Of a stretch of DNA of 64,000 nucleotides, positions 4,744 to 50,510 are shown piece by piece (within the stretch, counting starts at the first letter, position 1; every line of letters starts with the position of its first letter). Where the stretch lies: positions 24,366,001 through 24,430,000 of the forward strand of contig CM106586.1 in NCBI GenBank assembly GCA_048013815.1. The letters are read 5' to 3'. The translations under genes and the position numbers were made by a program. The notes beneath the pieces were generated by a model that had not been told where the DNA came from, searched no databases, and was given only the letters and a program-made list of their open reading frames with translations. The stretch comes from Setoptus koraiensis. Lineage: Eukaryota; Animalia; Arthropoda.

Positions 4744-7155
4744 TCAAACTTGTGATTCTGATCTAGGAATTCCATCAGGCGGCGCAGATATCGCTGTTGT
4801 TGGCTGCTCGAGTCCACCTGCCTCACGCTCCAAAAGGGTGGCTCTATAGGCGCTGAGGTAGTCGTTTCTAGTGATCTTCAGATAAGATGTATTGGCAACA
4901 ACCTCAACGGTGTAATCGGGTATAAAATGTTGTTGAAGCGGCGCTTGAGAGCCATTCAATTTGTTGAGAGACAAATTAGAGGCACGTAACTCTTTCATTG
5001 GGATTGACCGATTTGGCGATGCCTGTTGCGCTTCGTTCTTGTCAGGTTGTGACACAACCAATTCCAATTTTTTCATAGATATAGAAATGGAGCCAGAGTT
5101 ACTGAGCAAACCCGGTTCAGGTGCTGCAATAGTTGGTTGCTCTAATTTCTCTAATGTCAATGCATTAACACCAAAACAGCTAAATGGTCCTCCATCAAAT
5201 ACTAGACTCTCTTTGCCGCAAACAACATGCACTCGACCCTCCAGTATCATAATGAAATAATCGGCGGGCTCGCCGGTTGTATATAAACGCTTGCTGGCCG
5301 CATTGGCAGCGTCTAATTTGCATTTGTAGTAAATTTTCTGTGATAGTAGCCGCTTTAAAATGGAATCGCTGATGTATTTATAAGTGAACGGTTCTACTGT
5401 AGTAGCTAAATATTGATAGGCAGCTAAACATAATTGCGGTGTAACAACATTGAAACCAGAATCACCTTGGCCCAAATTGGTGCTAAATTGTGAGAAATCT
5501 TTTCTTACTTGAGCTTCTTTGCGACGTCTCTTACGTCTATTATCACTCAATGTATCTGTTTCGTCATTAATTTCCATTTGCATGATCTCTTCAATAACAT
5601 CCTCTAATGTAACAACACCAATTATCTCATAATATGGATCATTTTCGCCATCGTCCAATATTCTTCTGACCATGGCCATATGAGATTTACCTGTTTTAAA
5701 TTCGTCCAATGCCAGGTCTAAGGTAGCATCTTCAAAAACGTACATGATGGGATGATTATAGAAGCTGATCATTGTGTGAACAGGCGTTTTATCATCCGGA
5801 TCTAACAATGCCAAATCTTTAGCGAACAACAATGCCACTATGTTTTTTCTATCTGATTCATACACAGGTATCCTAGAGTATCCACGTTCTATTATTTGTT
5901 GAATGGTGTCAAAGTCCAACACTGATGTCATATTTAACATGTAAACATCTTCTAATCTTGTCATAACTTCTGATACTTTGATACGTTTTAGTTTGAGCGC
6001 GCCAGATATTATGTTGACCTCGTCAGTTTCTAGATTATTGTATTCGCGTGTAACACGTATAAATTCCATTAGTCTCTCTCTATCATAAACGTGACCAATT
6101 TCCTCACCTAATGCAAGATCTAAACAAAAGCTCACCGGCCAGCTCAATGGCCAAGTGACTACCATGAAGAAATAGGTTAAGAATACAGTTTTTGCGCCCA
6201 CTGCCAATCCATGGCGAGAACAGAACGCTTGTGGTAATATCTCGCCAAACATTACAATAAATATAGTTGAAACGAAAACGGCCACTAAACCGCTTGTAAG
6301 ATCTTCCAATAATACGGCGATAGTTGAATTAACTAAAACGTTTGAGAATAGTAGCGAGCACAATAGATAATTGCCACGACGTCTAACTGGCTCGATGGCT
6401 CTAGCGTAGCGTTTCTCTGTTTCCGAACCGCATGATATTATAACTTGAAGCTCATTCTTGTCTAGAGCCATTAAACCCAAATTCAATCCAGAAAATAGAC
6501 CAGATAAGGCCAACAATAGTGCTATCAATATTATTTGCATATAGAGTGGCAAAAATTTGGCCTCAATGTATAACCGAAGCCACGCATGCGGTCCCTGGTG
6601 GCTCCAGCGAGATGTATCGGCAGATTCGCGCAAACAAAGATAGTACAATTGAGCTTTGGCTCCTGGAGATGGCATATCAACAATAATAGTGGCCACCGAG
6701 CTTGTATGTGGCTTGACAAATAATTGGAAAGATTTAACGCGATCATTATGAGTGCAATCATCTTGAGGTAGGCCAGCTTGCGGTGTTAGCGCAACGGATA
6801 AATTGCCAGTCAAATGTCTGCCAAATATAGTGACCTCAGTGGGATAGTTTGCTCTAATAACTAGCTCGCCCTCATCAGTTATATCTTTTGGCGTATCACA
6901 TCTGAAACCCAATATAACTGGCTTGGAGCCAGTTTCGCTAGTTACCACTTCGCTCTGGTTAGAGCCTTGGTCATCAATTAAGCCATCTTGGACATGACGC
7001 CTGACTCTTATTTTGGATATTACGTCATCATTTTGATTTTTCCAACTTTTAATTATTGTAAACAATATTAATGAAAATGCTAGAACTATGTATGATTTAA
7101 GTTTGAGGTTTTTCTTGCTAAACTTAGTTGAGAATATAGCATCGGATAACAACAT
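4744..7155 (-). CDS. CNNM: CNNM/Unextended metal (Mg2+) transporter, intronless, 803 aa
   Basis: N-terminal hydrophobic segment, extracellular domain, DUF21 ([21 protein letters not shown]), CBS pair (GYSRIPVYE, VTLEDVIEEI) and CNBH domain (YFIMILEGRV). Confidence 0.95.
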   Translation of the reverse strand: MLLSDAIFSTKFSKKNLKLKSYIVLAFSLILFTIIKSWKNQNDDVISKIRVRRHVQDGLIDDQGSNQSEVVTSETGSKPVILGFRCDTPKDITDEGELVIRANYPTEVTIFGRHLTGNLSVALTPQAGLPQDDCTHNDRVKSFQLFVKPHTSSVATIIVDMPSPGAKAQLYYLCLRESADTSRWSHQGPHAWLRLYIEAKFLPLYMQIILIALLLALSGLFSGLNLGLMALDKNELQVIISCGSETEKRYARAIEPVRRRGNYLLCSLLFSNVLVNSTIAVLLEDLTSGLVAVFVSTIFIVMFGEILPQAFCSRHGLAVGAKTVFLTYFFMVVTWPLSWPVSFCLDLALGEEIGHVYDRERLMEFIRVTREYNNLETDEVNIISGALKLKRIKVSEVMTRLEDVYMLNMTSVLDFDTIQQIIERGYSRIPVYESDRKNIVALLFAKDLALLDPDDKTPVHTMISFYNHPIMYVFEDATLDLALDEFKTGKSHMAMVRRILDDGENDPYYEIIGVVTLEDVIEEIMQMEINDETDTLSDNRRKRRRKEAQVRKDFSQFSTNLGQGDSGFNVVTPQLCLAAYQYLATTVEPFTYKYISDSILKRLLSQKIYYKCKLDAANAASKRLYTTGEPADYFIMILEGRVHVVCGKESLVFDGGPFSCFGVNALTLEKLEQPTIAAPEPGLLSNSGSISISMKKLELVVSQPDKNEAQQASPNRSIPMKELRASNLSLNKLNGSQAPLQQHFIPDYTVEVVANTSYLKITRNDYLSAYRATLLEREAGGLEQPTTAISAPPDGIPRSESQV

Positions 7156-16061: not shown

Positions 16062-17528
16062 ATGAACAGATCAATAATATGCTGTGGCATCTTTCGCCGC
16101 CTCGTTCATATGGGTAGAGTGGTACCCGATCTAGATGTGATAGTTAAAGAATCGATTGATTCTGGAGAAAATCCAAAGAGACTGCCTACTAGGCGAAACA
16201 TAACACGTGTGGACCTGCCGGTAGCGCTGGAATTTGCAGCCAAACGGGCATTAAAAAAGCACTCAAGCAAAAAATTCAGGAAAGATGTGCTTGAGGCGAA
16301 GTCGACTATTTATAAATACAAACTGCCGGATGACAAATATTTCTTATCTGAGAAGAAGGATAACATCAAAACTGAAATACATTTGCGTAACTTAAGAGAG
16401 AAACACGTCCATAATGCAGACAGTGAGTTTTTTGAGGATGGAATCATAGCAAGATCTCAAATGAATCAACTGATAGAGAATAAATTAGAAAGAACGCGTA
16501 GAGATTGGCATTACTTAGAATATGACGATTACGCTAGTGCGTTGTATATGGCCGCTAGACTAGCGCCTAATTACGCCGCGATCAAAACAGTTTTGGATGA
16601 AATAAAATCAGCAGATCCGCTATTCAAACCTATGACTGTACTCGACTTCGGTTCTGGGATGGGTACCACTATGTGGGCGGTCAACGAAACTTGGTTGAAC
16701 ACCACCAATGAGTTCTTGAATGTTGACATATCCCAGAGTCAACACGAATTGGCTGAATTTTTGCTCAGAGGCGGAAAGGAGACCGGAGACAATTTACCTG
16801 GCGTTTTCTTTAAAAACTATTTACCCACGTCACATTCAGTAAAGTATGATCTAGTTGTCTCAGCTTTCTCCTTATTGGACTTACCGACAGTTGAAAACCG
16901 TATCAGTGTGATAGAAAACCTTTGGCACAAAACTAACGATTTATTAGTTATTGTTGAGCGAGGTAACAAGGATGGATTCACAAGTGTTGCCGAGGCGCGA
17001 CATTTTATTTTAAACATATCTGGTCATAATGTCGCAAAGACACTTAATGCTGTAGGTGAGCTAGCTCCTAAACTGGGCTTCAACATGCCAAGCTGCCATA
17101 TAATTGCGCCATGTCCGCACGAGTTTGTTTGTCCGAGATTACAGATGCCAAGTAAAGGATCTCTCGACAGATGCAATTTCAATGTTCATTATGAACCCCT
17201 CGAAATAGGCATGAATAGAGGAACGGTAAATAAAGAAAATTTCTCTTATGTCGTCCTAAGAAAGGGATGCCATCCAAGCTATAATAACTATGATGAAACT
17301 AGGCCCCGCTGGCCTAGAATAGTCGAACCCCGAAAAAAAAGATCCAAGCACATGATTCACAAGTTATGTTGTCCTAACGGACATTTGGCCGAGACTATAA
17401 TTACCAAGAGAAGATACGGCTCTGCCATGTACAAGGTGGCCAAAAGTTGTGACTGGGGAGACATACTACCGGTGACTGTAGACGACTCTTATTGCAAGAA
17501 GTCTTGTAAATCAACAGAAGAAGATTAA
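16062..17528 (+). CDS. METTL17: Mitochondrial small-subunit assembly factor, methyltransferase-like 17 (Rsm22 family)
   Basis: YMAARLAPNYAA, VLDFGSGMG, APCPHEFVCP, FSYVVLRKG and WGDILP. Confidence 0.93.
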   Translation: MNRSIICCGIFRRLVHMGRVVPDLDVIVKESIDSGENPKRLPTRRNITRVDLPVALEFAAKRALKKHSSKKFRKDVLEAKSTIYKYKLPDDKYFLSEKKDNIKTEIHLRNLREKHVHNADSEFFEDGIIARSQMNQLIENKLERTRRDWHYLEYDDYASALYMAARLAPNYAAIKTVLDEIKSADPLFKPMTVLDFGSGMGTTMWAVNETWLNTTNEFLNVDISQSQHELAEFLLRGGKETGDNLPGVFFKNYLPTSHSVKYDLVVSAFSLLDLPTVENRISVIENLWHKTNDLLVIVERGNKDGFTSVAEARHFILNISGHNVAKTLNAVGELAPKLGFNMPSCHIIAPCPHEFVCPRLQMPSKGSLDRCNFNVHYEPLEIGMNRGTVNKENFSYVVLRKGCHPSYNNYDETRPRWPRIVEPRKKRSKHMIHKLCCPNGHLAETIITKRRYGSAMYKVAKSCDWGDILPVTVDDSYCKKSCKSTEED

Positions 17529-18956
17529 AGAGTGGGCTGTATTAACTATACGAAAATATTATTTATATATAGAAGCGTTTTCTCGATGTCTGCATCTCGT
17601 GCCTCTTGAGCATCCACTCATATTCGCCGTATTTAGGGTCAAACGTTCCTTTTTGTAAATACATCAGTTTCATTGCAAACTGGGGGCCGCATTCTTGCAG
17701 ATCCACCCTCGAGCGCTTCGCATCTACTTTATATCGGTGGTAACGGAAAAATATGTAGTCTCTTTGATTGTGAAACGTACAAACAGTGCTATATTGTATC
17801 CTGGGAAGAGTTGGAAACAAACAAGAAAACATTCTTCCGACACTATATCCAAGGCGCGTGTTGAAGTTATTGAGTATGACTTCGGGTCTATTAAAAGGGG
17901 GCGGTTTTACAGCGTTCGTCAATTGGTCGGTGAGTTTCACCGATGACAGTCGAAAGTTAGCGGTAGGTCCGTTGGGTAAATGAACTAGGAGCAAGCCATT
18001 TGGCTCCCGACGATTCTCGTTGATCACGATTAGATCTGTATAACCTCTCTCTATGCAACCGCGGATTATCTTCTGAATAGATGATCGGTTTCTAAACCTA
18101 AACTCTCCACGTGGGACAATCTGTTTGAACTCTCGTGCCAACTGAATGGTACGGGTATGAGGGTTATCGGAAGTGGTAATGAGAACTTTGGGATTGCGGT
18201 TCTTATCTAATTTGAAGTGATCAGCCATTTCATCATGATCTAGATCAAATTCCGTCTCTTTATCGTCATAAGCAACAATTGTTTCATCGTAGATACGTGT
18301 GTTCTCTATGGTGCGCGGTTGTTTCTTCTCTTTAGCTTCGTCATTTGTACTACGGGTAGAAGAGTAGACTCTTGATTCAACACTGGTATCTTGATCCGGG
18401 AAATTGTCTTCCGAAAGCTCAGCACTCGGTCGTCCATGCGTACCATCTGACGAAGTCAAGTCTATCACACGAGTCGTGTTCTTGTCTATGCCCAGAAGCT
18501 TCATAAGTTGTTTCAACTTTCCAATTTTTGTCTGTTCTTCTATCTTCCTCGATTCATTATTATGAGCTTTCTTGTTTTTGGTTACTGGTCTTGATTGGTT
18601 ACAATTTATACCTTGCAATCGATCTGGCAATTCATGTAGAAAAGTCAATGTGGCTGAGTACAAATAAACGCGGCATAACGGTAAGGACATCCTCGAACGT
18701 AATACACTAGCTTCCTTGATGATGTCAATGATTTTGGACATCTCCTCAAAATGGCCCTTCTGTGTCATCTTATCCGCCTCATCTATCACTAGACTATTCA
18801 CACTAGCGATACTGGCAAGATTAATATGTTCGCTGATATTTGATTGGATCATTTCGTATAGTCGACCAGGGGTGGCAACGATAATCTCAGGATGTTGTGT
18901 GTTTAACTGTCTGAGTTGTTTGTCTTGATTCATACCTCCAATGAGACAACATGATT
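16543..18956. repeat. Segment A (2,414 bp), inverted copy at 26378..28792
   Basis: Reverse complement of 26378..28792, with roughly 10 differences and one 1-bp indel seen by eye. Covers the METTL17 3' part, RPF1 and part of the DDX24-derived domain. Confidence 0.95.
17563..18933 (-). pseudogene. RPF1: 5'-truncated copy of the DDX24-RPF1 chimera (456-aa ORF from MNQDK)
   Basis: Matches residues 188-643 of the 25840..27771 chimera with 2 aa changes. Homology stops at 18956, so the Q motif, motif I and the promoter are absent. Confidence 0.8.
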
Positions 18957-18965
18957 CTATTATTA

Positions 18966-19310
18966 TCGATCGTGAATGTCAGACTGATTTTACTTTTAAC
19001 TGTATTTTAATCGCTGAGCTCTATTTTATTATTATTATTAATAGAACAACAACAACAACAACTTGCAATGGACAATGTTCTTGTGAACAAAAATACAAAT
19101 GACACAGGATGCTGGCCTATGACCCAGAGGAGAATTGCAAGGGTAACTTTATGGATTGGTTCCTGTTCCCCTCAAATTGTGTATGTAGGTGCATAGTAAA
19201 ATCCGCAGCCGCATTGATTGGTCAGCCCGCGTCGACGCCATTGCCCTCAAAAGCGGACGGTCGATCATTTGGAGTACTTGAAGATCATACCGGCCGCCAA
19301 TAGAAAGGCC
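18966..19310. repeat. Segment B' (345 bp), inverted copy of 28795..29142
   Basis: Reverse-complement match with about 18 substitutions and a 3-bp indel counted by eye. Contains the Spaetzle last intron/exon and the ABCH 3' end. Confidence 0.93.
19045..19303 (+). pseudogene. Orphan duplicated terminal exon of the Spaetzle gene, with a premature stop
   Basis: AG acceptor at 19043-44. Reads [25 protein letters not shown]; TGG>TGA at 19100-19102. No upstream Spaetzle exons on this strand. Confidence 0.88.
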
Positions 19311-21538
19311 ACCAGCCAGCCAATGGTGACCGCAAAGCCTGCCAAAACACCTGGTTCCGCTATGCCCCATCCTCTTGACAGAATGTGTCTCAGTGTTTCT
19401 GTTGGCAAGGTTTGTGGTTGCGCATAACTGAGCGGCCTGAGCCAATGTGGCATGGCCTCAATAGGCCAAATAATACCGGCTAAAATGAGATTTGTATAGA
19501 ATGTTCCCACTAGCATCATAACGGCGGTGTTTTCTTCTTCGCAAATAGCTGATACTAATAAACCAAATGCCATACCTGTGCAGCCCTGCAATAAAATCAA
19601 TAATACAACCCAAACAAATGGTCCCCTAGAGGGTATTTCAAATACAAAGAATGTACAAGCTAACACTAATACTATTTGTACTGTCATTACAACAATCTGA
19701 TTGATTGCATGGGCCAGTAGTATTTGGCTTGTTTGTACACCCGACACTAGACTGCGCTCTAATAATCCATCTCGTCGTTCTAAAATAAAAGCCAACGCTG
19801 TTAGTCCAGTCGCCATGACGTAACTAATACTTATGACCACACCGGGCGCCATGAATTCTAAATAACCATCCTTTTTCATTGTGCCATAAATTGGTTTAGC
19901 CACCTGTATGGGTAGATCGGCGAGTGAACCATCATAGCCGAGGTTCTCCAGAGAATCGCGAGCAAAACTTAAAAATGTTTTCCTGAGCGTTGTCTCCAAT
20001 GCGAGCGCCAAATGAAGATTTGTTAGATCGGGATACACTCGTATGGTGCCGTTAGAAATGGTCTCATTGGTGACCTCATCGCCCAATATTAGCCTAGATT
20101 GTAAATTTTGTGTATAGCCATCTGGTATGTGTATAACGCCCCACGCTTTTCCTCTTTGAACTGCCTCTATTGCATGAGATATATTGTTGTATTTCACTTG
20201 GCGCACAATTTTTTTGTCTAAGCCATTGAGAAATAATATACTGGATTGTGGTATCACTTCTTCATTGACAATGGCCACAGGAACATCAAATGGTTCGCCA
20301 CCAATGCACGAACAAAACAATATAACTTGTATGGCTGGCACTATAAATTGAAATATGAGAACTGGCGGATTTCTTTTTAATCTAACAAAATTTTTCCATG
20401 TTACTGCCATGAGCGTTTTGCACCATTGTGTCAATGGTTGTTGTTGTTTACTTTGTTTGAATGCTGGATCAGCGCGTCTGATGGCCCATTTAATTAGTTG
20501 TGTTTCTGTAGAATATTCATCAGCAATTAAATGATCCTCTGTTGTTGTCGATACAGTATTGTTGCGCATAGAATCTGTGACACACAATTTCAAGAAAACA
20601 TCCTCTAAACTATTCAATCGATAGGTGGCCATCAATTGTTGCGGGCTATTCTCGGCAAGTATTTTGCCGTGTCGCATTAGACCAACAACATTGGCTTGAC
20701 GAGCCTCCTCAATATAATGAGTGGTTATAATAACGCTAATCTTTTCTGTATGTGTCAATGTCACTAAATGTTCCCAGATGCTTTGTCTGAGAAGCGGATC
20801 AACACCAACGGTTGGCTCATCCAAAATGAGTAAAGGGGGCGAATGCACTAGGGCAGCCGCCAGAGATACTCGCCTTTTTTGTCCGCCACTTAAGTTGGCC
20901 ACTAAGCGCTTTTTAGTCGGTAATCCTAGAAGGCATAACAAAAACTCCACTCTTTTTTTGATCTCATCAATATTCATACGATTTATTTTTCCAAAATATT
21001 TCAGCGTTTCCTCTATTGTAAAATCTTCATAAATAGATATCTCTTGGGGCATGTAACCAACTGCCCTGCCTGGTATTTGACATTCTCTATCATTCGGTTT
21101 ATAACCAAACACCAACAAGGATCCTCGTTGTGGTTTCAATCGGCCAACAGTGCACCTGAGCATGGTAGTTTTGCCACATCCACTTGGTCCCAATAGACCG
21201 TAGCTGTTTATTGGACGTTTGTTCGATTATTAGTTTATTTACATTAATAAATTACAACTTTTTATATTAATAAATATTGCGTTTACTTACATGCAACCCT
21301 CAGGAACGGTGAGATTAATACTATCCAATATTGTCTTCTTGTATCTGCCTCTACCCACTTCATAATGCAGATCTCTAATTACCACAGAAGCATATTGACG
21401 TGTTGACGAGACATTGAGATTACGTTCGATCGTGGTCCCATTGCTAGGCACGAAGATGGTTGTTACTAGCTGACTATTATCATCTTGATTGATTTGTTTT
21501 CTATGAATTAGATCGTTTTGGCTGTATTTTATTGACAT
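19265..21538 (-). CDS. ABCH: ABC transporter subfamily H; join(21538..21291,21203..19265), 728 aa
   Basis: NBD-first half transporter with [28 protein letters not shown] and [17 protein letters not shown], then an ABC-2 type TMD. An 87-bp GT-AG intron restores [10 protein letters not shown]. Confidence 0.9.
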
Positions 21539-22363
21539 ATTCTTCTTTCTTCCCTCAAATATTATCAACTAATTACTTTAATACCTATGTATGTATGTAC
21601 CCAAAGTAACGCGAATTAGGAGTGAAAGTCTTGAACCTCATCTGATGCAAGTTTGTTTAAAAGTTACTATCGGTAGCTTTACAGCAGCACGAGTAACACA
21701 CTACACAATAGGGGTTTACTACACACAAAGTTCAACAGGTTGATCTGGTTCATTTCGAAACAACAGCCAGTACCGTAAAGCACCCTTACTTGTGTGCCAA
21801 GACAGTGTCTTTGTGTATTTTTTAGTGTTAGAGTGTGTGTGTGTGTGCTCGCTCGAGTGGAGACAAATTGTCATTCAGTTAAACCTTGGACAATAACCAT
21901 TCAAACAATCAACCAAATTATTTATACATTACTATAACAACATTGATAAGGGAATATTCTCGCCGCACTTGTTATTATCACATATCACCATTGTTTGTCA
22001 TATTCACACTATCATCTAGTGTATAATACTGTTGACAATACATAGTTTTTGCAGTACAAACACTAAATTGTACAACTAATCTACCTGTTGTCGTTGTTGT
22101 TTATCTAATTTTGGAACAACATTTGGTGTGAGTCACAGGCGATAAATGCAACACTGTATAGGAAGTGATAATAATTTGAATGGCAACAAGAATAACTAAT
22201 AATACATAAAACCCGCGGGTCAGCTTATGACCTTCGTTGATAGGAGTTAGTATCGCTTATGTGGGCAGACAAGTGGTTCAACCATTCAACGAATTTCAAG
22301 TTTATATTCTGGAAGCAATGTAACAAAATCGAGGAAAAGCATTACCAATATCCAGTGTTCCAC

Positions 22364-23580
22364 AGTTTATATTGGATTTCAGATGTGATACGCCAAAAGA
22401 TATAACTGATGAGGGCGAGCTAGTTATTAGAGCAAACTATCCCACTGAGGTCACTATATTTGGCAGACATTTGACTGGCAATTTATCCGTTGCGCTAACA
22501 CCGCAAGCTGGCCTACCTCAAGATGATTGCACTCATAATGATCGCGTTAAATCTTTCCAATTATTTGTCAAGCCACATACAAGCTCGGTGGCCACTATTA
22601 TTGTTGATATGCCATCTCCAGGAGCCAAAGCTCAATTGTACTATCTTTGTTTGCGCGAATCTGCCGATACATCTCGCTGGAGCCACCAGGGACCGCATGC
22701 GTGGCTTCGGTTATACATTGAGGCCAAATTTTTGCCACTCTATATGCAAATAATATTGATAGCACTATTGTTGGCCTTATCTGGTCTATTTTCTGGATTG
22801 AATTTGGGTTTAATGGCTCTAGACAAGAATGAGCTTCAAGTTATAATATCATGCGGTTCGGAAACAGAGAAACGCTACGCTAGAGCCATCGAGCCAGTTA
22901 GACGTCGTGGCAATTATCTATTGTGCTCGCTACTATTCTCAAACGTTTTAGTTAATTCAACTATCGCCGTATTATTAGAAGATCTTACAAGCGGTTTAGT
23001 GGCCGTTTTCGTTTCAACTATATTTATTGTAATGTTTGGCGAGATATTACCACAAGCGTTCTGTTCTCGCCATGGATTGGCAGTGGGCGCAAAAACTGTA
23101 TTCTTAACCTATTTCTTCATGGTAGTCACTTGGCCATTGAGCTGGCCGGTGAGCTTTTGTTTAGATCTTGCATTAGGTGAGGAAATTGGTCGCGTTTATG
23201 ATAGAGAGAGACTAATGGAATTTATACGTGTAACACGCGAATACAATAATCTAGAAACTGACGAGGTCAACATAATATCTGGCGCGCTCAAACTAAAACG
23301 TATCAAAGTATCACAGTATACATTGAGTGATAATAGACGTAAGAGACGTCGCAAAGAAGCTCAAGTAAGAAAAGATTTCTCACAATTTAGCACCAATTTG
23401 GGCCAAGGTGATTCTGGTTTCAATGTCGTTACACCGCAATTATGTTTAGCTGCCTATCAATATTTAGCTACTACAGTAGAACCGTTCACTTATAAATACA
23501 TCAGCGATTCCATTCTAAAGCGGCTACTATCACAGAAAACAGTGGTCCATGTGGGAAAATTTATCTTTCGCAATCACTGA
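22364..23580 (+). pseudogene. CNNM: Partial CNNM duplicate lacking the N-terminus, CBS pair and most of CNBH; in-frame ORF to 23580
   Basis: 22364..23313 matches parent 6919..5971 and 23314..23539 matches 5558..5334 (reverse complement). No in-frame ATG before the internal Met of DMPSPG; upstream stop at 22321. Confidence 0.85.
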
Positions 23581-23658
23581 TAAAGACCTTAGCACGTCGA
23601 TTGAATTATCTCGTGTGTGTTGATTTATTCAAGAATGAGGGAATGTTCGTGGTTCAAG

Positions 23659-25533
23659 TCATTTGGATGAGGTGATAAGTCTTTCAGCTCGTTCAATGAT
23701 CAATCCCTTCCTAGTCATGGCAGGTTGATTCAATAGAGATTTCAATTTAGATGATAGTTGAGACAATCGTCTTTGCTTATCCACTTCGTCGCGCTTGCTT
23801 TGCTCCAAATTTTTGCCCTTGCTGATTCGTCTAAGATCATCATCGTCCAATTCGATGTCGCATTCAGCAGCTGCCTTTAAAAACCAATTCTTCTCCGATT
23901 TATCTTCTCGTATTCTATGATCAAGCTTATCACATTCTTGAGCCAATCTTACACGCTCTCTTATGATGTTCTTCAATGCAGTCTTAATTTGATAGTCGGC
24001 CAAATCTTTACCACCGTTTATACTATTGCACAGCCTTTTGTAGAATGGAATTTCCTTAGGTTCGCATAGAGTTAAACTTAAGCCCTTCTTGTCTATCCTA
24101 GCAGTCCTTCCGCTGCGATGTATGTAGGATTCGCAAGTCCGAGGGACCTGATAATGAACAACAAAATCTAGATCTTTTATATCTAGGCCTCGTGCAGCGA
24201 CATCCGATGCTATCATCACGGCAGAGGGCCTACTTCGAAACTTATCTAAAGCACTCAATCGCTTCTTTTGATCCATATCAGCGTGCAATGTCATCGTTTC
24301 TATTTGTAACCATTTCAACACGTTACTCAGTCTTCTAAGACAATCCTTACTGTTACAGAATATAAGTGTTCGCCCATGTTCACGGTTGTGCAATAAGAAG
24401 TAGTAGAGATAGAAATCTTTGTCTTGAATGGAACAATTGACTTTCAATTCTGTCAACTGATCAGCACTCGGTCGTCCATGCATACCATCTGACGAAGTCA
24501 AGTCTATCACACGAGTCGTGTTCTTGTCTATGCCCAGAAGCTTCATAAGTTGTTTCAACTTTCCAATTTTTGTCTGTTCTTCTATCTTCCTCGATTCATT
24601 ATTATGAGCTTTCTTGTTTTTGGTTACTGGTCTTAATTGGTTACAATTTATACCTTGCAATCGATCTGGCAATTCATGTAGAAAAGTCAATGTGGCTGAG
24701 TACAAATAAACGCGGCATAACGGTAAGGACATCCTCGAACGTAATACACTAGCTTCCTTGATGATGTCAATGATTTTGGACATCTCCTCAAAATGGCCCT
24801 TCTGTGTCATCCTATCCGCCTCATCTATCACTAGACTATTCACACTAGCGATACTGGCAAGATTAATATGTTCGCTGATATTTGATTGGATCATTTCGTA
24901 TAGTCGACCAGGGGTGGCAACGATAATCTCAGGATGTTGTGTGTTTAACTGTCTGAGTTGTTTGTCTTGATTCATACCTCCAATGAGACAACATGATTGT
25001 ATATTCGTGAACATGGTAATCTTGTTGATCTCTTCTCTAACTTGAGAAGCCAACTCTCTTGTTGGAACTAATATTAGAGCCTCGAGACCAGAGTGTGCAT
25101 TGTCTACTTCTGTTTCATCAAAATCACTATCATCATTATCAGTCTCAGACTCATCAGAATTGTTCGGTTCGTTATCCATAGGAACATTCCCTAAGTCTAC
25201 TACATCTGTCTCATCGACAAGCTCAAGATGTTCACCTGTATAGTCGAAGTCATTTTTTTGGTTATTATATTCGTTTATTTTGCGCTTTATTTCGGCTGAC
25301 CGAGTGTGCTTTGAGTCCAAAATTTGATTAACAATTGGTATTGCATAGGCCAGAGTCTTCCCGGATCCTGTCTTGGCTGCACCGAGGACGTGCTTTTCAT
25401 CTATCAACGAGGCTCTCAGAGTCTTTGCTTGAATCGGCATAGGTTTCTTAAGATTGTGCTCGGCTAATGATTTACGAATAGGTTCGGCCAGAGGCAAATC
25501 CGACCAACCCTTTATCTTGATTTTCGTACTCAT
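23659..25533 (-). CDS. DDX24: DEAD-box RNA helicase DDX24/Mak5, intronless, 624 aa
   Basis: GAAKTGSGKT, PTRELA, TPGRL, DEAD, SAT, YLYYFL...GRTLIFCNS, DVAARGLDI and YIHRSGRTAR. Confidence 0.93.
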   Translation of the reverse strand: MSTKIKIKGWSDLPLAEPIRKSLAEHNLKKPMPIQAKTLRASLIDEKHVLGAAKTGSGKTLAYAIPIVNQILDSKHTRSAEIKRKINEYNNQKNDFDYTGEHLELVDETDVVDLGNVPMDNEPNNSDESETDNDDSDFDETEVDNAHSGLEALILVPTRELASQVREEINKITMFTNIQSCCLIGGMNQDKQLRQLNTQHPEIIVATPGRLYEMIQSNISEHINLASIASVNSLVIDEADRMTQKGHFEEMSKIIDIIKEASVLRSRMSLPLCRVYLYSATLTFLHELPDRLQGINCNQLRPVTKNKKAHNNESRKIEEQTKIGKLKQLMKLLGIDKNTTRVIDLTSSDGMHGRPSADQLTELKVNCSIQDKDFYLYYFLLHNREHGRTLIFCNSKDCLRRLSNVLKWLQIETMTLHADMDQKKRLSALDKFRSRPSAVMIASDVAARGLDIKDLDFVVHYQVPRTCESYIHRSGRTARIDKKGLSLTLCEPKEIPFYKRLCNSINGGKDLADYQIKTALKNIIRERVRLAQECDKLDHRIREDKSEKNWFLKAAAECDIELDDDDLRRISKGKNLEQSKRDEVDKQRRLSQLSSKLKSLLNQPAMTRKGLIIERAERLITSSK

Positions 25534-26915
25534 GTTGTGAAGGATTAGTGGAGAAAAATTCTGGAAACTCCTTAATTTAAATACAATTAATTTTATCGGT
25601 TTTTAATGATGATACTAGAAACAATGCGGAGTATCAGACACGTGTATTAATTTTGAATTTCCCTCTAAAGATACTCCTGGGGCGAGCACAGCAATGCTGC
25701 TCCGGTTTAGTCGAAAACGACAAGCAAGCACACGTTATTTTCAGCGTTGTGCCATCAACTCTGTATAATAAAATATATAATGTTATTTAAATCTTACTTA
25801 TCGTTACCATAAAACCCTTGTTATTCATCTAAACTTGGTATGGATCGCACTAAAGCAAAGATCAAGAGATGGTCGGATTTGCCCCTGGCCGAACCTATTC
25901 GTAAATCATTAGCCGAGCACAATCTTAAGAAACCTATGCCGATTCAAGCAAAGACTCTGAGAGCCTCGTTGATAGATGAAAAGCACGTCCTCGGTGCAGC
26001 CAAGACAGGATCCGGGAAAACTCTGGCCTATGCAATACCAATTGTTAATCAAATTTTGGACTCAAAGCACACTCGGTCAGCCGAAATAAAGCGCAAAATA
26101 AACGAATATAATAACCAAAAAAATGACTTCGACTATACAGGTGAACATCTTGAGCTTGTCGATGAGACAGATGTAGTAGACTTAAGGAATGTTCCTATGG
26201 ATAACGAACCGAACAATTCTGATGAGTCTGAGACTGATAATGATGATAGTGATTTTGATGAAACAGAAGTAGACAATGCACACTCTGGTCTCGAGGCTCT
26301 AATATTAGTTCCAACAAGAGAGTTGGCTTCTCAAGTTAGAGAAGAGATCAACAAGATTACCATGTTCACGAATATACAATCATGTTGTCTCATTGGAGGT
26401 ATGAATCAAGACAAACAACTCAGACAGTTAAACACACAACATCCTGAGATTATCGTTGCCACCCCTGGTCGACTATACGAAATGATCCAATCAAATATCA
26501 GCGAACATATTAATCTTGCCAGTATCGCTAGTGTGAATAGTCTAGTGATAGATGAGGCGGATAAGATGACACAGAAGGGCCATTTTGAGGAGATGTCCAA
26601 AATCATTGACATCATCAAGGAAGCTAGTGTATTACGTTCGAGGATGTCCTTACCGTTATGCCGCGTTTATTTGTACTCAGCCACATTGACTTTTCTACAT
26701 GAATTGCCAGATCGATTGCAAGGTATAAATTGTAACCAATCAAGACCAGTAACCAAAAACAAGAAAGCTCATAATAATGAATCGAGGAAGATAGAAGAAC
26801 AGACAAAAATTGGAAAGTTGAAACAACTTATGAAGCTTCTGGGCATAGACAAGAACACGACTCGTGTGATAGACTTGACTTCGTCAGATGGTACGCATGG
26901 ACGACCGAGTGCTGA
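24461..26915. repeat. Palindrome: 1,046-bp arms (24461..25506 and 25870..26915) with a 363-bp spacer
   Basis: Arms are colinear without indels; 6 substitutions seen. Confidence 0.93.
25534..25839. promoter_or_regulatory. Putative bidirectional promoter between DDX24 and the DDX24-RPF1 chimera
   Basis: 306-bp AT-rich interval between two divergent ATGs. Position only; no motif established. Confidence 0.5.
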
Positions 26916-27771
26916 GCTTTCGGAAGACAATTTCCCGGATCAAGATACCAGTGTTGAATCAAGAGTCTACTCTTCTACCCGTAGTACAAATGACGAAGCT
27001 AAAGAGAAGAAACAACCGCGCACCATAGAGAACACACGTATCTACGATGAAACAATTGTTGCTTATGACGATAAAGAGACGGAATTTGATCTAGATCATG
27101 ATGAAATGGCTGATCACTTCAAATTAGATAAGAACCGCAATCCCAAAGTTCTCATTACCACTTCCGATAACCCTCATAGCCGTACCATTCAGTTGGCACG
27201 AGAGTTCAAACAGATTGTCCCACGTGGAGAGTTTAGGTTTAGAAACCGATCATCCATTCAAAAGATAATCCGCGGTTGCATAGAGAGAGGTTATACAGAT
27301 CTAATCGTGATCAACGAGAATCGTCGGGAGCCAAATGGCTTGCTCCTAGTTCATTTACCCAACGGACCTACCGCTAACTTTCGACTGTCATCGGTGAAAC
27401 TCACCGACCAATTGACGAACGCTGTAAAACCGCCCCCTTTTAATAGACCCGAAGTCATACTCAATAACTTCAACACGCGCCTTGGATATAGTGTCGGAAG
27501 AATGTTTTCTTGTTTGTTTCCAACTCTTCCCAGGATACAATATAGCACTGTTTGTACGTTTCACAATCAGAGAGACTACATATTTTTCCGTTACCACCGA
27601 TATAAAGTAGATGCGAAGCGCTCGAGGGTGGATCTGCAAGAATGCGGCCCCCAGTTTGCCTTGAAACTGATGTATTTACAAAAAGGAACGTTTGACCCTA
27701 AATACGGCGAATATGAGTGGATGCTTAAGAGGCACGAGATGCAGACATCGAGAAAACGCTTCTATATATAA
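25840..27771 (+). CDS. RPF1: Chimeric ORF: DDX24 N-terminal DEAD domain (aa 1-358) fused in frame to RPF1 with its Brix domain (aa 359-643)
   Basis: DDX24 identity ends at GRPSA (26915). Downstream: PRTIENTRIYDETIV, PKVLITTS, HLPNGPTANF, ILNNFNTRLG, TFHNQRDYIFFRYHRY, LQKGTFDPKYGEYEW and QTSRKRFYI, which are RPF1-type motifs. Confidence 0.88.
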   Translation: MDRTKAKIKRWSDLPLAEPIRKSLAEHNLKKPMPIQAKTLRASLIDEKHVLGAAKTGSGKTLAYAIPIVNQILDSKHTRSAEIKRKINEYNNQKNDFDYTGEHLELVDETDVVDLRNVPMDNEPNNSDESETDNDDSDFDETEVDNAHSGLEALILVPTRELASQVREEINKITMFTNIQSCCLIGGMNQDKQLRQLNTQHPEIIVATPGRLYEMIQSNISEHINLASIASVNSLVIDEADKMTQKGHFEEMSKIIDIIKEASVLRSRMSLPLCRVYLYSATLTFLHELPDRLQGINCNQSRPVTKNKKAHNNESRKIEEQTKIGKLKQLMKLLGIDKNTTRVIDLTSSDGTHGRPSAELSEDNFPDQDTSVESRVYSSTRSTNDEAKEKKQPRTIENTRIYDETIVAYDDKETEFDLDHDEMADHFKLDKNRNPKVLITTSDNPHSRTIQLAREFKQIVPRGEFRFRNRSSIQKIIRGCIERGYTDLIVINENRREPNGLLLVHLPNGPTANFRLSSVKLTDQLTNAVKPPPFNRPEVILNNFNTRLGYSVGRMFSCLFPTLPRIQYSTVCTFHNQRDYIFFRYHRYKVDAKRSRVDLQECGPQFALKLMYLQKGTFDPKYGEYEWMLKRHEMQTSRKRFYI

Positions 27772-28792
27772 ATAATATTTTCGTATAGTTAATACAGCCC
27801 CAGTCTTTAATCTTCTTCTATTAATTTACAAGACTTCTTGCAATAAGAGTCGTCTACTTTCACCGGTAGTATGTCTCCCCAGTCACAACTTTTGGCCACC
27901 TTGTACATGGCAGAGCCGTATCTTCTCTTGGTAATTATAGTCTCGGCCAAATGTCCGTTAGGACAACATAACTTGTGAATCATGTGCTTGGATCTTTTTT
28001 TTCGGGGTTCGACTATTCTAGGCCAGCGGGGCCTAGTTTCATCATAGTTATTATAGCTTGGATGGCATCCCTTTCTTAGGACGACATAAGAGAAATTTTC
28101 TTTATTTACCGTTCCTCTATTCATGCCTATTTCGAGGGGTTCATAATGAACATTGAAATTGCATCTGTCGAGAGATCCTTTACTTGGCATCTGTAATCTC
28201 GGACAAACAAACTCGTGCGGACATGGCGCAATTATATGGCAGCTTGGCATGTTGAAGCCCAGTTTAGGAGCTAGCTCACCTACAGCATTAAGTGTCTTTG
28301 CGACATTATGACCAGATATGTTTAAAATAAAATGTCGCGCCTCGGCAACACTTGTGAATCCATCCTTGTTACCTCGCTCAACAATAACTAATAAATCGTT
28401 AGTTTTGTGCCAAAGGTTTTCTATCACACTGATACGGTTTTCAACTGTCGGTAAGTCCAATAAGGAGAAAGCTGAGACAACTAGATCATACTTTACTGAA
28501 TGTGACGTGGGTAAATAGTTTTTAAAGAAAACGCCAGGTAAATTGTCTCCGGTCTCCTTTCCGCCTCTGAGCAAAAATTCAGCCAATTCGTGTTGACTCT
28601 GGGATATGTCAACATTCAAGAACTCATTGGTGGTGTTCAACCAAGTTTCGTTGACCGCCCACATAGTGGTACCCATCCCAGAACCGAAGTCGAGTACAGT
28701 CATAGGTTTGAATAGCGGATCTGCTGATTTTATTTCATCCAAAACTGTTTTGATCGCGGCGTAATTAGGCGCTAGTCTAGCGGCCATATACA
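26378..28792. repeat. Segment A', inverted copy of 16543..18956
   Basis: Reverse-complement match; junction to segment B at 28793-28794. Confidence 0.95.
27807..28787 (-). pseudogene. METTL17: 5'-truncated METTL17 copy (326-aa ORF from the native internal Met, MAARL)
   Basis: Matches residues 163-488 of 16062..17528 except T>K and ST>LI near the C-terminus. Lacks the presequence. Confidence 0.82.
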
Positions 28793-28794
28793 GC

Positions 28795-28840
28795 GGCCTT
28801 TCTATTGGCGGCCGGTATGATCTTCAAATACTCCAAATGA
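28795..28840 (+). pseudogene. ABCH: Orphan ABCH 3' stub ([14 protein letters not shown])
   Basis: Same translation as the ABCH C-terminus at 19310..19265; antisense to the Spaetzle stop region. Confidence 0.85.
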
Positions 28841-31800
28841 TCGACCGTCCGCTTTTGAGGGCAATGGCGTCGACGCAGGCTGACCAATCAATGCGGCTGC
28901 CGATTCAACTATGCACCTACAAACACAATTTGAGGGGAACAGGAACCAATCCATAAAGATGCCCTTGCAATTCTCCTCTGGGTCATAGGCCAGCATCCTG
29001 TGCCATTTGTATTTTTGTTCACAAGAACATTCACCATTGCACCTTGTTGTTGTTGTTTTCCTATTAATAATAATAATAATAAAGTAGAGCTCAGCGATTA
29101 AAACACAGTTAAAAGTAAAATCAGTCTGACAGTCACGATCGAAGGCGTCTTCCGGCGTGATATTGCTGGCTCTATATTCATTGAATTATGTATCCACGTG
29201 ACCATGATGATGATCACTTTCATGAGCTAGGTCACGAGCCAAACGAATCAGTGCACGATATTAAACAGCGATAAACAGCACTTCTCGTGTGCGTTTCAGG
29301 TTGATGCTGCTAAGTGATGTTGCCGCCAATTTGCGCTAAATGCTAATTGCACTTGTTATTGTTCTCGCTGGTAGACATGACTTCCTCTCTCTAGATATAT
29401 ATAGATGAGTGTATGTGCGAGAGAAACAATCGTGCACACGACGGTACCAAGTATTGGTAGTTAACATTATGGTCAGTGGATATATTCAATGTCATGTTCG
29501 AGTGCAAATGGCCAAAGAATCACCATAAAAAGAGAGCTCCACTTGACCACTCGTTGGTAATTATACCAAATGCAACAGTTTCAACTCAAAACAGCGAACA
29601 CGCCATCACCACCATCATCATTTGGAGAGTTTGCTTAAAAAACGACTCGTCTGGCATGCTCTCTCCAGTGTTTGTCAGTGTGCGGGTTTTCTCTGACCTC
29701 ACTCATATACGCTGCTCATCATCTTTGATTTGTTGTTGGTCGACACAACAACACTAACACCACTAAAGGGCGGTATTTGTTTAAAAATACGCACAACACA
29801 ACCAGAGTAAGTCACAGTGCAATAGTCGCTTCTATCTATAAGTATTTTCTATTAGCAATTAACTCTCTCATGTCTCATATATCATCGTGGCATCTCAACT
29901 ATATTTGAAACACTAATCAAGCCCACAAGAGTGAAGAGTCAAAAATAATAAACTCGCAATCCACTTTCACATATTATTATTTGTGGGGTCAATCATTTAC
30001 TTACTTGCATATCTCTTGTTGTATTGCCTGTTGCATATGTTGACTGTTCACAATTGCTCTAACATGCCCATGAGAGTTTGTTGCCCAATACGGAGTCACA
30101 ACTTCCAGGTGACTTTCGCACGAATCCACCCTGAAATGAACAAAAAAAGAAGGATACAACACACACATAATAGGCATTATATAGGTGGATCAACAACTTG
30201 TATTGATTGTTGGTGTAAAGCACAAAATTCGTGCAACATGCTGATATAATTAGACATTGCACATCAACAAACACACACACACACACTCGGTGTATCCGTA
30301 TTGTCGGTTGTTGCTGATGATGTGAGTGCATGGACACTATGGGCTGTTTCTTTTTTGGTACTTACCTGTGTGCAAACAAGTCCCTGGCACTGTTACTTAC
30401 AGCAGCACCGTTTGTCCTTGAAGATCTTTTACTTCGAACTTGACCGGTGCCACTTGTGACGACATCGTGATCTTCAATTGTTGTTGCATTCTTTGCTTTT
30501 GTTGAGATTTCACTTGTCGTTAGTTGTTTGTGCTGTTGATTTTGAGAAGCACCATTATCGGCATCCAATGTGAACTTTCTACCATGTTTGCTGTTCATTT
30601 GTTGTTGACTGGCGCTTAAATTGGTGCCATTTGAGGTTGCTTGTGACGCCGACGTAACTATTCTCTTCCGAAATGGCTCCGATTTGCGCTTCCTTGCCAT
30701 TTGACCAGTTGACAACAATGATCCAGTTTCAGGCTCGTTTGATGCCAGGTTATTGTTGCTTTCGCTTTTTTGATTGTGTTGACCGCTATAATTATCTCTA
30801 TAATGATTGTTTGTATGGTCATGCTGTGATGCATCTGTGGTTTTGACAGAACCGGCAACGTGATGATCATGCAAGTCTATGGCATAAGCATAGTTGGACA
30901 TTGGATAAAGGGTATTCCTATTGAGCACTAAGTCATCGTCGATTGGTTGCGGTGCCTCATTGCCGAACATACGCTTCATGAGGGCCTTATTTTCCTCAAT
31001 GAAATCATGAATATCGTCTCTTTGTGTGTGTAGCGAACATGTGTGGTTATGGAATAACGAAATTGACAAAGAAAGAGAAAGTAAACAACAATTATCATCC
31101 AATTACTAAAAACTGACAATTGAGACCGTTTTTCGGCTCGCACACTTCAAAGCGACCAAATAATAGATCAAAATGCAGGACATGACCACGATGAGGCTAC
31201 TATAGGTCACAAGTGACATAGGATAAGAATTGAAAATTGCTCTGATAACTAAATTATGTTGTTGATGCATCGCCAAATTGAATCGAGAAAATATTTTCTT
31301 CAACGCAGTTGTTGTTTCCATTGTTGTTGTTGAGTTGTATACTATACTTGTTGCATTGGTGAAGCTACAACAACGACAACAACAACAACAACAGCGACAA
31401 CAACACGTACAGAGAAAAATGCCAACTCAGAGGATGTGGAGACGGCTGAACTGGTTGTTGCTGGACTCAGCACCACGACCACAACCGCGACACTTGATAT
31501 CGGCGAAGCTCAAAAGAATTGGAGTGGTCATTTCTTTTCGGTTGTTTGCAACCTGCCACAACAAGTATAGTGCAGCAGTAGAAGTAGAGGTAATGGTAGT
31601 GGTGGCAGCGGAGCATAAATTGTTGTTGAAACAAGTAATTGCTGTTTTGATGGCAGCACTCCGCTATCAATTATTATCACGGGTGGTGGCCTAACTCACC
31701 ACTAATGATGTTTTGAGTCGATCAAACTAAACCAAACCAAACTAAACTAAATCAGAATACAAACTCACCTTTTAACTCTGTGTACAACAGTGGCCTCGTG

Positions 31801-50336: not shown

Positions 50337-50510
<174 letters not shown>

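What the first reader, a model, noticed from the sequence alone, without database searches (positions are those of the whole stretch)
25840..27771. In-frame DDX24 (DEAD domain)-RPF1 (Brix) chimeric gene joining two pre-60S assembly factors
Seen: one uninterrupted 643-aa ORF. Residues 1-358 are the DDX24 Q motif through motif III (no RecA2, so no motifs IV-VI), joined at 26915/26916 (GRPSA|E) to an RPF1 with a complete Brix domain and C-terminus. The same junction recurs at 18419/18418. No unfused RPF1 is in the window, and intact DDX24 is retained 306 bp away. Known: Mak5/DDX24 and Rpf1 are both essential nucleolar factors of early 60S maturation in yeast, and a lone RecA1 cannot unwind RNA. 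I know of no described DDX24-RPF1 fusion. Inference: if this is the only RPF1 source, the chimera must supply an essential function and tethers a helicase half-domain to the pre-ribosome. Caveat: an internal Met (MADHF) just before the Brix domain could give a short RPF1.
Basis: partly seen in the sequence, partly recalled or inferred. Interest (0 to 1): 0.85.

Follow-up and report, generated by a model that had tools for sequence, protein, structure and literature searches.

The report
Half-helicase fused to ribosome factor RPF1
In a tiny plant-feeding (eriophyoid) mite, the first half of the RNA helicase DDX24 has been duplicated and joined in frame to the ribosome-assembly factor RPF1. The fusion gene is real in this DNA and has not been seen in any other organism, but whether it is expressed and whether it is the mite's only RPF1 remain untested.

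Summary
ORF 25840-27771(+) encodes 643 aa. Residues 1-358 are about 99% identical to the 5' half of the intact DDX24 gene 306 bp away and cover the whole RecA1 domain and none of RecA2. Residues 359-643 are a complete RPF1 lacking only its own start codon and basic head. The DNA joint is exact at 26915/26916. It recurs at 18418/18419 in a second, truncated copy.

The locus has the layout of a staggered-break inversion (16543-29142, order P-Q'-X'-P'-Q) that post-dates the fusion. Undoing it restores the Rsm22 - gene - DDX24 order and orientation seen in a related mite.

No protein among 1.84 billion representatives matches both halves, and about 25 eriophyoid RPF1s are unfused (258-316 aa).

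Between the two copies the RPF1 half differs by 5 synonymous and 2 non-synonymous changes (P=0.006 against neutrality). The helicase half looks relaxed, with Arg to Lys after DEAD where 18 relatives have Arg.

My reading: a lineage-specific chimeric gene that makes working RPF1, with the RecA1 domain mainly a donor of promoter and start codon. There is no whole-genome search, no read support and no RNA evidence.

The parts
25840..27771 (+). Chimeric ORF, 643 aa plus stop
25840..26915 (+). DDX24-derived part (residues 1-358): complete RecA1 with Q motif, motifs I, Ia, Ib, II (DEAD) and III (SAT), plus the whole inter-domain linker. From 25858 it is an inverted copy of 24461-25518.
26916..27771 (+). 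RPF1 part (residues 359-643): acidic N-tail, conserved KKQPRTIENTR motif (27007-27039) and Brix domain. It has no initiator Met of its own; the first in-frame ATG is at 27106 (M423).
25534..25839 (.). 306-bp spacer between the divergent start codons of DDX24 and the chimera. The window's only two TATTTAAAT 9-mers lie here in mirror positions: 25575-25583(-) and 25784-25792(+), 42 and 48 nt upstream of the two ATGs.
23659..25533 (-). Intact DDX24/Mak5 orthologue (624 aa; RecA1, RecA2 and C-terminal helices), the parent of the N-half
17563..18933 (-). Truncated second copy of the chimera (456-aa ORF: DDX24 residues 188-358 plus full RPF1). Same joint at 18418/18419.
16543..18964 (.). Repeat P, an inverted duplicate of P' (26371-28792). 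Identity 99.4%, with the differences clustered.
26371..28792 (.). Repeat P', carrying the 3' two-thirds of the chimera and a truncated Rsm22/METTL17 copy (27807-28787, minus strand)
18966..19310 (.). Repeat Q' (3' end and flank of the ABC transporter gene), an inverted duplicate of Q at 94% identity
28795..29142 (.). Repeat Q, the left-over copy of the ABC transporter 3' end and flank
16062..17528 (+). Intact Rsm22/METTL17-like gene, convergent with the RPF1 body (34-bp gap)

Best explanation
This is a real, lineage-specific chimeric gene of an eriophyoid mite. A local inverted duplication copied the 5' half of DDX24 head-to-head next to its parent and joined it in frame to the N-terminal tail of RPF1. 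The copy very likely included the DDX24 start codon and possibly its core promoter. The cut fell at the RecA1/RecA2 boundary. The predicted product is a folded stand-alone RecA1 domain, a flexible stretch of about 130-140 residues, and a complete RPF1 (conserved N-motif plus Brix domain). The RPF1 part does the ordinary RPF1 job in nucleolar pre-60S assembly and is what selection maintains. The RecA1 part supplies transcription and translation start signals and is otherwise mostly a tolerated passenger, since it cannot unwind RNA without RecA2. Later a staggered-break inversion (16543-29142) cut through the chimera and through three neighbouring genes. It duplicated the break intervals, which left one full chimera and one truncated copy. 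Shown here: the sequence anatomy, the joints, the repeat layout, uniqueness in the databases, the predicted folds and the substitution pattern. Inferred: expression, function, the passenger role and the order of events.
For: ORF and domains. Exact joint, present in two copies that differ at 15 positions, so it predates their divergence and is not a one-off read artefact. The second copy's DDX24 fragment is identical to that of the full chimera and shares its 3 differences from intact DDX24, so it derives from the chimera. The P-Q'-X'-P'-Q layout with clean end-joined junctions fits the staggered-break model of PMC1885836. Undoing the inversion gives Rsm22(+), chimera(-), a 306-bp spacer and DDX24(+). 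A relative has Rsm22(+), another gene(-), a 316-bp spacer and DDX24(+). The RPF1 half is an RPF1 orthologue: human RPF1 8FKP at E=1e-87 by sequence and as top Foldseek hit, and 77% identity to Fragariocoptes setiger RPF1. It lacks only the Met and basic head seen in relatives. RPF1 half: 5 synonymous to 2 non-synonymous differences, pS 0.027, pN 0.003, P=0.006. There is no in-frame ATG between the joint and the conserved motif. The cut lies one residue before the first RecA2 strand. The AF2 model has two confident domains joined by a low-confidence linker. Isolated DEAD domains are stable and bind nucleotide (2G9N, 2GXS among the hits). RecA1 half: 3 synonymous to 6 non-synonymous differences, and DEAD-K where 18 of 18 relatives and the parent have DEAD-R.
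Against: There is no transcript, protein or read-level evidence. Only 64 kb of the genome was searched, so a normal RPF1 may exist elsewhere. The substitution tests rest on 7 and 9 differences. The differences are clustered, which could reflect gene conversion, short-read polishing or pooled-population polymorphism rather than independent divergence. Homology of the two promoter-proximal regions is only suggestive (against 57, 65). No remnant of an ancestral RPF1 5' end was found in the spacer. RPF1 lies in a different neighbourhood in all relatives sampled, so how RPF1 reached this spot is not explained.
Confidence: 0.6

Rival explanations
1. A redundant young chimera. The RPF1 body here is a duplicated fragment whose intact parent survives elsewhere in the genome. 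The fusion ORF is open only because it is young or kept similar to its donors by gene conversion, and it is dispensable or on its way to decay.
For: New chimeric genes usually arise by duplication with the parents retained, as is true for DDX24 here. RPF1 sits in a different neighbourhood in every relative sampled, and the slot between Rsm22 and DDX24 holds another gene in a relative. So RPF1 came here secondarily. Identity of 99% to the parent shows recency or conversion.
Against: The RPF1 half shows a purifying-selection pattern between the two copies (5 synonymous to 2 non-synonymous, P=0.006), which is not expected for redundant, decaying copies. Both cut points respect domain boundaries. 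No other RPF1 lies in the window, and none is noted elsewhere in this genome's scan notes, which is weak evidence.
Confidence: 0.25
2. RPF1 is made without the RecA1 domain. Transcription or translation starts inside the DDX24-derived sequence (in-frame Mets at 188, 215, 243, 252, 269 and 331) or at M423, so the helicase part serves only as leader or promoter DNA.
For: The truncated second copy has an open frame only from Met188 onward, yet its RPF1 half also looks constrained. A test of one neutral copy against both constrained gives about P=0.04, my calculation from the counts. The RecA1 half appears relaxed.
Against: A start at M423 removes the conserved PRT(I/V)ENTR..DET motif kept in all relatives and in human RPF1. 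The full ORF has its own ATG in good context (G at -3, G at +4) with a TATA-like box 48 nt upstream. Nothing marks an internal start.
Confidence: 0.15
3. An assembly artefact. The inverted near-identical segments come from haplotype mixing, chimeric long reads or mis-joins, and no real chromosome carries the joint.
For: If the source is the pooled-mite PacBio CLR/Flye assembly described in PMC11920263 (more than 100,000 wild individuals, heterozygosity 1.13%), copy divergences of 0.5-0.9% resemble allelic divergence. Polishing could also produce the patchy differences.
Against: The same joint occurs in two places with different flanks and different substitutions. All repeats (0.35-2.4 kb) are far shorter than long reads. 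The novel junctions are clean and together fit a single known mechanism. The differences are biased toward synonymous sites, unlike sequencing error. The reconstructed ancestor matches a relative's synteny.
Confidence: 0.05

Closest known systems
RPF1 (ribosome production factor 1; Brix family, sigma-70-like motif), a nucleolar pre-60S assembly factor (yeast Rpf1, human RPF1 in PDB 8FKP)
   Same: Residues 377-643 align end to end with human RPF1 (E=1e-87). The model's best structural matches are RPF1 chains in human, yeast and S. pombe pre-60S particles. The conserved N-motif and the C-terminus are kept.
   Different: It has no initiator Met or basic head of its own. It carries 358 residues of DDX24 at the N-terminus. 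About 25 eriophyoid RPF1s, and all other hits, are unfused.
DDX24 / Mak5 DEAD-box helicase
   Same: Residues 1-358 are about 99% identical in DNA to the adjacent DDX24 orthologue and keep the Q motif and motifs I to III.
   Different: RecA2 (motifs IV-VI) and the C-terminal helical extension are absent. It therefore cannot be an RNA-dependent ATPase or unwinding enzyme. The Arg after DEAD, invariant in relatives, is Lys.
Inversion-associated inverted duplications from staggered breaks (Ranz et al. 2007, PMC1885836), and chimeric genes born from such duplications
   Same: The order is left-P-Q'-X'-P'-Q-right, with both break intervals duplicated in inverted orientation. The junctions are clean, and every cut gene survives in one intact copy.
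   Different: The 2.4-kb duplicated interval is longer than the roughly 1.9-kb maximum aligned length reported for D. yakuba in that paper. The inversion acted on a gene that was already chimeric. The fusion step itself is a head-to-head duplication whose exact mechanism is unresolved.
The yeast 'Mak5 cluster' (Mak5, Ebp2, Nop16, Rpf1; Pratte et al. 2013, PMC3846774)
   Same: The two fused parents are orthologues of two members of one genetically defined pre-60S module found on the same Nsa1 particle.
   Different: In yeast they are separate proteins. Mak5's crosslink site (25S H36-39) is reported as distant from its genetic partners (PMC6300602), so the fusion does not mirror a known physical contact.

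Membership tests
RPF1 orthologue (Brix family) | Brix domain | tested here: met
   Pfam PF04427 at E=4e-24, residues 443-611. AF2 pLDDT is about 85 over residues 430-615.
RPF1 orthologue (Brix family) | Closer to RPF1 than to the other Brix paralogues (IMP4, BRX1, RPF2, SSF1) | tested here: met
   Human RPF1 scores E=1e-87 against IMP4 at 2e-37. The top Foldseek hits are RPF1 chains. Named hits are RPF1.
RPF1 orthologue (Brix family) | Conserved N-terminal PRT(I/V)ENTR..DET motif before the Brix domain | tested here: met
   The motif occupies residues 390-405 and aligns with all relatives.
RPF1 orthologue (Brix family) | Own start codon and short basic N-terminal head, with a stand-alone protein of 258-350 aa | tested here: not met
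   There is no in-frame ATG between the joint and the motif. Relatives start with M followed by a basic head.
RPF1 orthologue (Brix family) | Association with pre-60S particles and requirement for 27S processing | not testable with these tools
   This needs biochemistry or genetics.
DEAD-box RNA helicase (DDX24/Mak5) | RecA1 with Q motif and motifs I, Ia, Ib, II and III | tested here: met
   AF2 pLDDT is about 90.
DEAD-box RNA helicase (DDX24/Mak5) | RecA2 with motifs IV-VI (Helicase_C) | tested here: not met
   The chimera has no PF00271 hit, while the neighbour does. The cut is one residue before the first RecA2 strand.
DEAD-box RNA helicase (DDX24/Mak5) | Orthology of the donor gene to DDX24/Mak5 | tested here: met
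   The best named hits of the intact neighbour are DDX24/MAK5.
Staggered-break inversion with inverted duplications | Both break intervals duplicated in inverted orientation in the order P-Q'-X'-P'-Q | tested here: met
Staggered-break inversion with inverted duplications | Outgroup carries the un-inverted order without the duplicates | tested here: inconclusive
   One distant relative keeps Rsm22(+), a gene(-) and DDX24(+) as in the reconstruction, but no close outgroup is available.
Duplication-born chimeric gene | Both parental genes retained intact | tested here: inconclusive
   The DDX24 parent is retained. The RPF1 parent is not in the window, and the rest of the genome was not searchable.

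The most novel reading that the evidence does not exclude
The chimera, together with its truncated copy, is the mite's only source of RPF1. On this reading the tethered RecA1 is not inert: held on pre-60S particles by RPF1, it binds nucleotide or a DDX24 docking site or cofactor, and so modulates or partly replaces a step of the Mak5/DDX24 module. That would be a natural 'half-helicase on a leash' joining two members of one genetic cluster.
Probability: 0.12. Interest if true: 0.75.

Novelty: new variant of a known kind. Interest (0 to 1): 0.45.

Why it matters
If it is expressed and is the sole RPF1, an essential and deeply conserved ribosome-assembly factor has tolerated a 358-residue half-helicase at its N-terminus. 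The donor of that half is a gene from its own genetic module (the Mak5 cluster). That would be a natural experiment on how much freedom the RPF1 N-tail has on the pre-60S particle. It would also be a dated example of gene birth by inversion-linked duplication in one of the most compact animal genomes. If a normal RPF1 exists elsewhere, it is simply a neat young chimeric gene. In either case the locus is a textbook-quality staggered-break inversion in which four genes are cut and one intact copy of each remains.

Tried and rejected
1. Exact-sequence look-up of the chimera in public assemblies found nothing on record. The species itself is absent from the protein databases: the best RPF1 hit is 77% identical and the best DDX24 hit 56%. 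No independent assembly or transcript could therefore be found.

2. Search for the fusion elsewhere: none was found among proteins of 354-1125 aa that carry an RPF1 part. No protein among 1.84 billion representatives matches both halves.

3. The scan's own notes mention no other RPF1 or Brix gene. This is uninformative.

4. I tested the idea that the ancestral RPF1 start is the ATG at 26989. It is out of frame, opens a 12-codon ORF, and one such ATG is expected by chance in that stretch. Rejected.

5. I tested the idea that a small promoter inversion swapped the two N-termini, or that the DDX24 piece was inserted into an RPF1 that kept its own start. No remnant of an RPF1 head lies in the spacer. 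The N-termini of relatives do not discriminate between the models. The residual similarity of the first ten codons and the mirrored TATTTAAAT boxes favour a duplication that included the DDX24 start. However, alignment of the upstream regions is not significant on its own.

6. Splicing-out of the helicase part: no credible splice sites by eye.

7. A MAFFT alignment of half-length helicases with RPF1s (A4) was misaligned and was discarded in favour of A3.

8. RPF1 synteny gives no ancestral anchor. The RPF1 neighbours in Eriophyidae (FOXO, CID, UQCC2, peroxiredoxin) are absent from the window and from the F. setiger contig.
Full report
**1. What is in the sequence**

The ORF 25840-27771(+) is uninterrupted and encodes 643 aa.
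- Pfam finds a DEAD domain (residues 34-284) and a Brix domain (443-611), and no Helicase_C domain.
- The neighbouring ORF 23659-25533(-), 624 aa, has both DEAD and Helicase_C. Its best named relatives are DDX24/MAK5.
- The chimera keeps the Q motif (PMPIQ 32-36), motif I (53-61), Ia (158-163), Ib (208-212), DEAD (238-241) and SAT (280-282).
- A three-way DNA alignment shows identity to DDX24 up to base 26915, unrelated sequence from 26916, and the same joint in a second copy at 18418/18419.

**2. The two halves**

The C-half (359-643) is an RPF1 orthologue.
- It is 77% identical to Fragariocoptes setiger RPF1 and about 70% to Aceria tosichella.
- It matches human RPF1 (PDB 8FKP) at E=1e-87, against 2e-37 for the paralogue IMP4.
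- RPF1 chains of human, yeast and S. pombe pre-60S particles are the best structural matches of the model.

About 25 eriophyoid RPF1s are stand-alone proteins of 258-316 aa. They are built as Met, a short basic head, an acidic tract and then KKxPRT(V/I)ENTR. The chimera has the acidic tract, the motif (390-400), the Brix domain and the C-terminus, but no Met or basic head. There is no in-frame ATG between the joint and the motif. The next in-frame ATG is M423, which would delete the motif.

The N-half ends exactly at a domain boundary. In an AF2 model of the intact DDX24 the last RecA1 strand is 339-343, a linker follows, and the first RecA2 strand is 359-365. The cut is after residue 357 in intact numbering.

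The AF2 model of the chimera has two confident modules: RecA1 (about 10-283, pLDDT near 90) and Brix (about 430-615, pLDDT near 85). They are separated by a mostly low-confidence stretch (284-416) containing one helix. Isolated DEAD domains that were crystallised alone, one of them with AMP bound, are among the structural hits. A stand-alone RecA1 is therefore plausibly folded, but it cannot be a helicase.

**3. The genomic context**

A self-comparison gives four inverted repeat pairs:

| Pair | Segment | Inverted copy of | Identity |
|---|---|---|---|
| D | 24461-25518 | 25858-26915 | 99.15% |
| P | 16543-18964 | 26371-28792 | 99.4% |
| Q | 18966-19310 | 28795-29142 | 94.3% |
| C | 5334-6920 | 22363-23539 | about 99% |

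Pair C is a partial copy of the CNNM gene.

P and Q lie in the order left-P-Q'-X'-P'-Q-right. This is the signature of an inversion made by staggered breaks with fill-in and end joining (PMC1885836). The junctions are clean, with 0-3 nt of overlap or a few filler bases.

The inversion cut four genes, and each survives in one intact copy:
- the chimera;
- the Rsm22/METTL17-like gene (intact at 16062-17528, truncated copy at 27807-28787);
- the ABC transporter;
- the flank in Q.

I re-derived it independently.

Undoing the inversion places Rsm22(+), the full chimera(-), a 306-bp spacer and DDX24(+) in a row. A related mite contig has Rsm22(+), an RCC1-like gene(-), a 316-bp spacer and DDX24(+). 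This supports the reconstruction. It also shows that RPF1 reached this slot secondarily.

The second copy's DDX24 fragment is identical to that of the full chimera and shares its three differences from intact DDX24. The fusion therefore came first and the inversion second.

**4. How the fusion arose**

The two DDX24 5' halves lie head to head.
- Four of the nine mismatches sit in the first 27 nt of the repeat, and the remaining 1031 nt are 99.5% identical.
- The first ten codons are still recognisably similar: MSTKIKIKGW against MDRTKAKIKRW.
- The only two TATTTAAAT 9-mers in the 64-kb window lie mirror-wise 42 and 48 nt upstream of the two start codons. Relatives' DDX24 and RPF1 promoters lack this box.

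This suggests that the duplication included the DDX24 start codon and core promoter, that it is older than 1% divergence implies, and that the coding body has been homogenised by gene conversion. The upstream alignment is not significant by itself, so this remains a suggestion.

The P/P' differences are also mosaic: 13 of 15 fall in 27179-27859, and none falls in the flanking 800 and 930 bp. This fits conversion. It could equally reflect short-read polishing or pooled polymorphism.

No remnant of an RPF1 5' end is left in the spacer.

**5. Evidence on function**

| Comparison | Synonymous | Non-synonymous | Result |
|---|---|---|---|
| RPF1 half, full chimera vs second copy | 5 | 2 | pS 0.027, pN 0.003; P=0.006 against neutrality |
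| DDX24-derived half, chimera vs parent | 3 | 6 | not different from neutral |

- Both amino-acid changes in the RPF1 half are conservative and occur in relatives.
- The synonymous and intergenic divergence inside the island of differences (about 4-6%) matches that of Q (5%).
- In the DDX24-derived half, the Arg after DEAD, invariant in 18 relatives and in the parent, is Lys in both chimera copies.
- All four differences in the tail of the truncated Rsm22 copy are non-synonymous.

The numbers are small. The picture is nonetheless coherent: the RPF1 part is translated and constrained, and the helicase part is relaxed. RPF1 has no start codon of its own, so a constrained RPF1 implies translation from within DDX24-derived sequence, that is, a fusion protein of some length. 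Both cut points respect domain boundaries, and the joint is in frame. This looks like survivorship of a workable product, although that argument is post hoc.

**6. Comparison with what is known**

- No DEAD+Brix protein appeared among proteins of 354-1125 aa that carry an RPF1 part.
- No protein among 1.84 billion representatives matches both halves.
- No paper in the library describes such a fusion.
- In yeast, Mak5, Ebp2, Nop16 and Rpf1 form a genetically defined 'Mak5 cluster' on Nsa1 particles (PMC3846774).
- Mak5 crosslinks to 25S H36-39, described as somewhat distant from those partners, and at the time of that 2018 paper Mak5 had not been seen in any cryo-EM structure (PMC6300602). My sequence search of the PDB also found no Mak5/DDX24 chain.

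The fusion therefore links two functionally related factors but does not mirror a known contact.

**7. Likely source and caveats**

The scan index says this genome has two pieces and about 775 windows, and the nearest relative belongs to the Phytoptidae. That fits the 47-Mb, two-chromosome assembly of Setoptus koraiensis. That assembly was made with PacBio CLR and Flye from more than 100,000 pooled wild mites, with heterozygosity of 1.13% and no RNA-seq (PMC11920263). I could not verify this identification.

If it is right, then:
- polymorphism and polishing may blur the copy differences;
- the fusion may be polymorphic in the population;
- all the repeats are much shorter than the reads, so a mis-assembly is unlikely.

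Whether another RPF1 exists elsewhere in the genome could not be tested with the tools available.

**8. Verdict**

This is a real and so far unique DDX24(RecA1)-RPF1 chimeric gene. It most probably makes functional RPF1 with a passenger half-helicase. It sits in a small rearrangement hot spot. The claim that it must supply an essential function is open. Interest is moderate.

Noticed in passing
window 16543-29142: Textbook staggered-break inversion. A 2.4-kb interval (P) and a 0.35-kb interval (Q) are duplicated in inverted orientation at the two ends. Four genes are cut, and one intact copy of each remains. P/P' are 99.4% identical but Q/Q' only 94%, and the P/P' differences cluster in 27179-27859. 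This suggests gene conversion between the long arms.
   Followed up: yes
window 22363-23539 (+) versus 5334-6920 (-): A third young inverted duplication: a partial copy of the CNNM metal-transporter gene (the intact gene is 4744-7155, 803 aa). The copy lacks 411 bp (5560-5970, probably the CBS pair) yet still forms an open 402-aa ORF (22372-23580) joining the CNNM transmembrane domain to the C-terminal CNBH domain.
   Followed up: partly
window 27807-28787 (-): Truncated Rsm22/METTL17-like copy with an open 326-aa ORF. It is identical to the intact gene over 933 bp and then has four non-synonymous nucleotide differences (three residues) in the last 17 codons.
   Followed up: partly
window 17563-18964 (-): The truncated chimera copy keeps a 456-aa ORF from Met188. 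An out-of-frame ATG lies 18 nt upstream, and AT-rich ABC-transporter 3' flank lies ahead of it. Its RPF1 half looks as constrained as that of the full copy, so it may also be expressed.
   Followed up: partly
L003 4458-9513 (Logan SRR33927357 contig): In another eriophyoid mite, Rsm22 and DDX24 flank an RCC1-repeat gene in the same orientations as the reconstructed pre-inversion order here. The RCC1-like gene is absent from this window.
   Followed up: partly
window 50337-50508: A (GTT)n microsatellite of about 57 copies at 95% purity.
   Followed up: no
L002 938-14181 (F. setiger JAIFTH010000851.1): The public 413-aa 'partial' RPF1 gene model spans 13 kb and has a spurious C-terminus. A plain 279-aa ORF at 947-1786 is the real RPF1.
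   Followed up: partly
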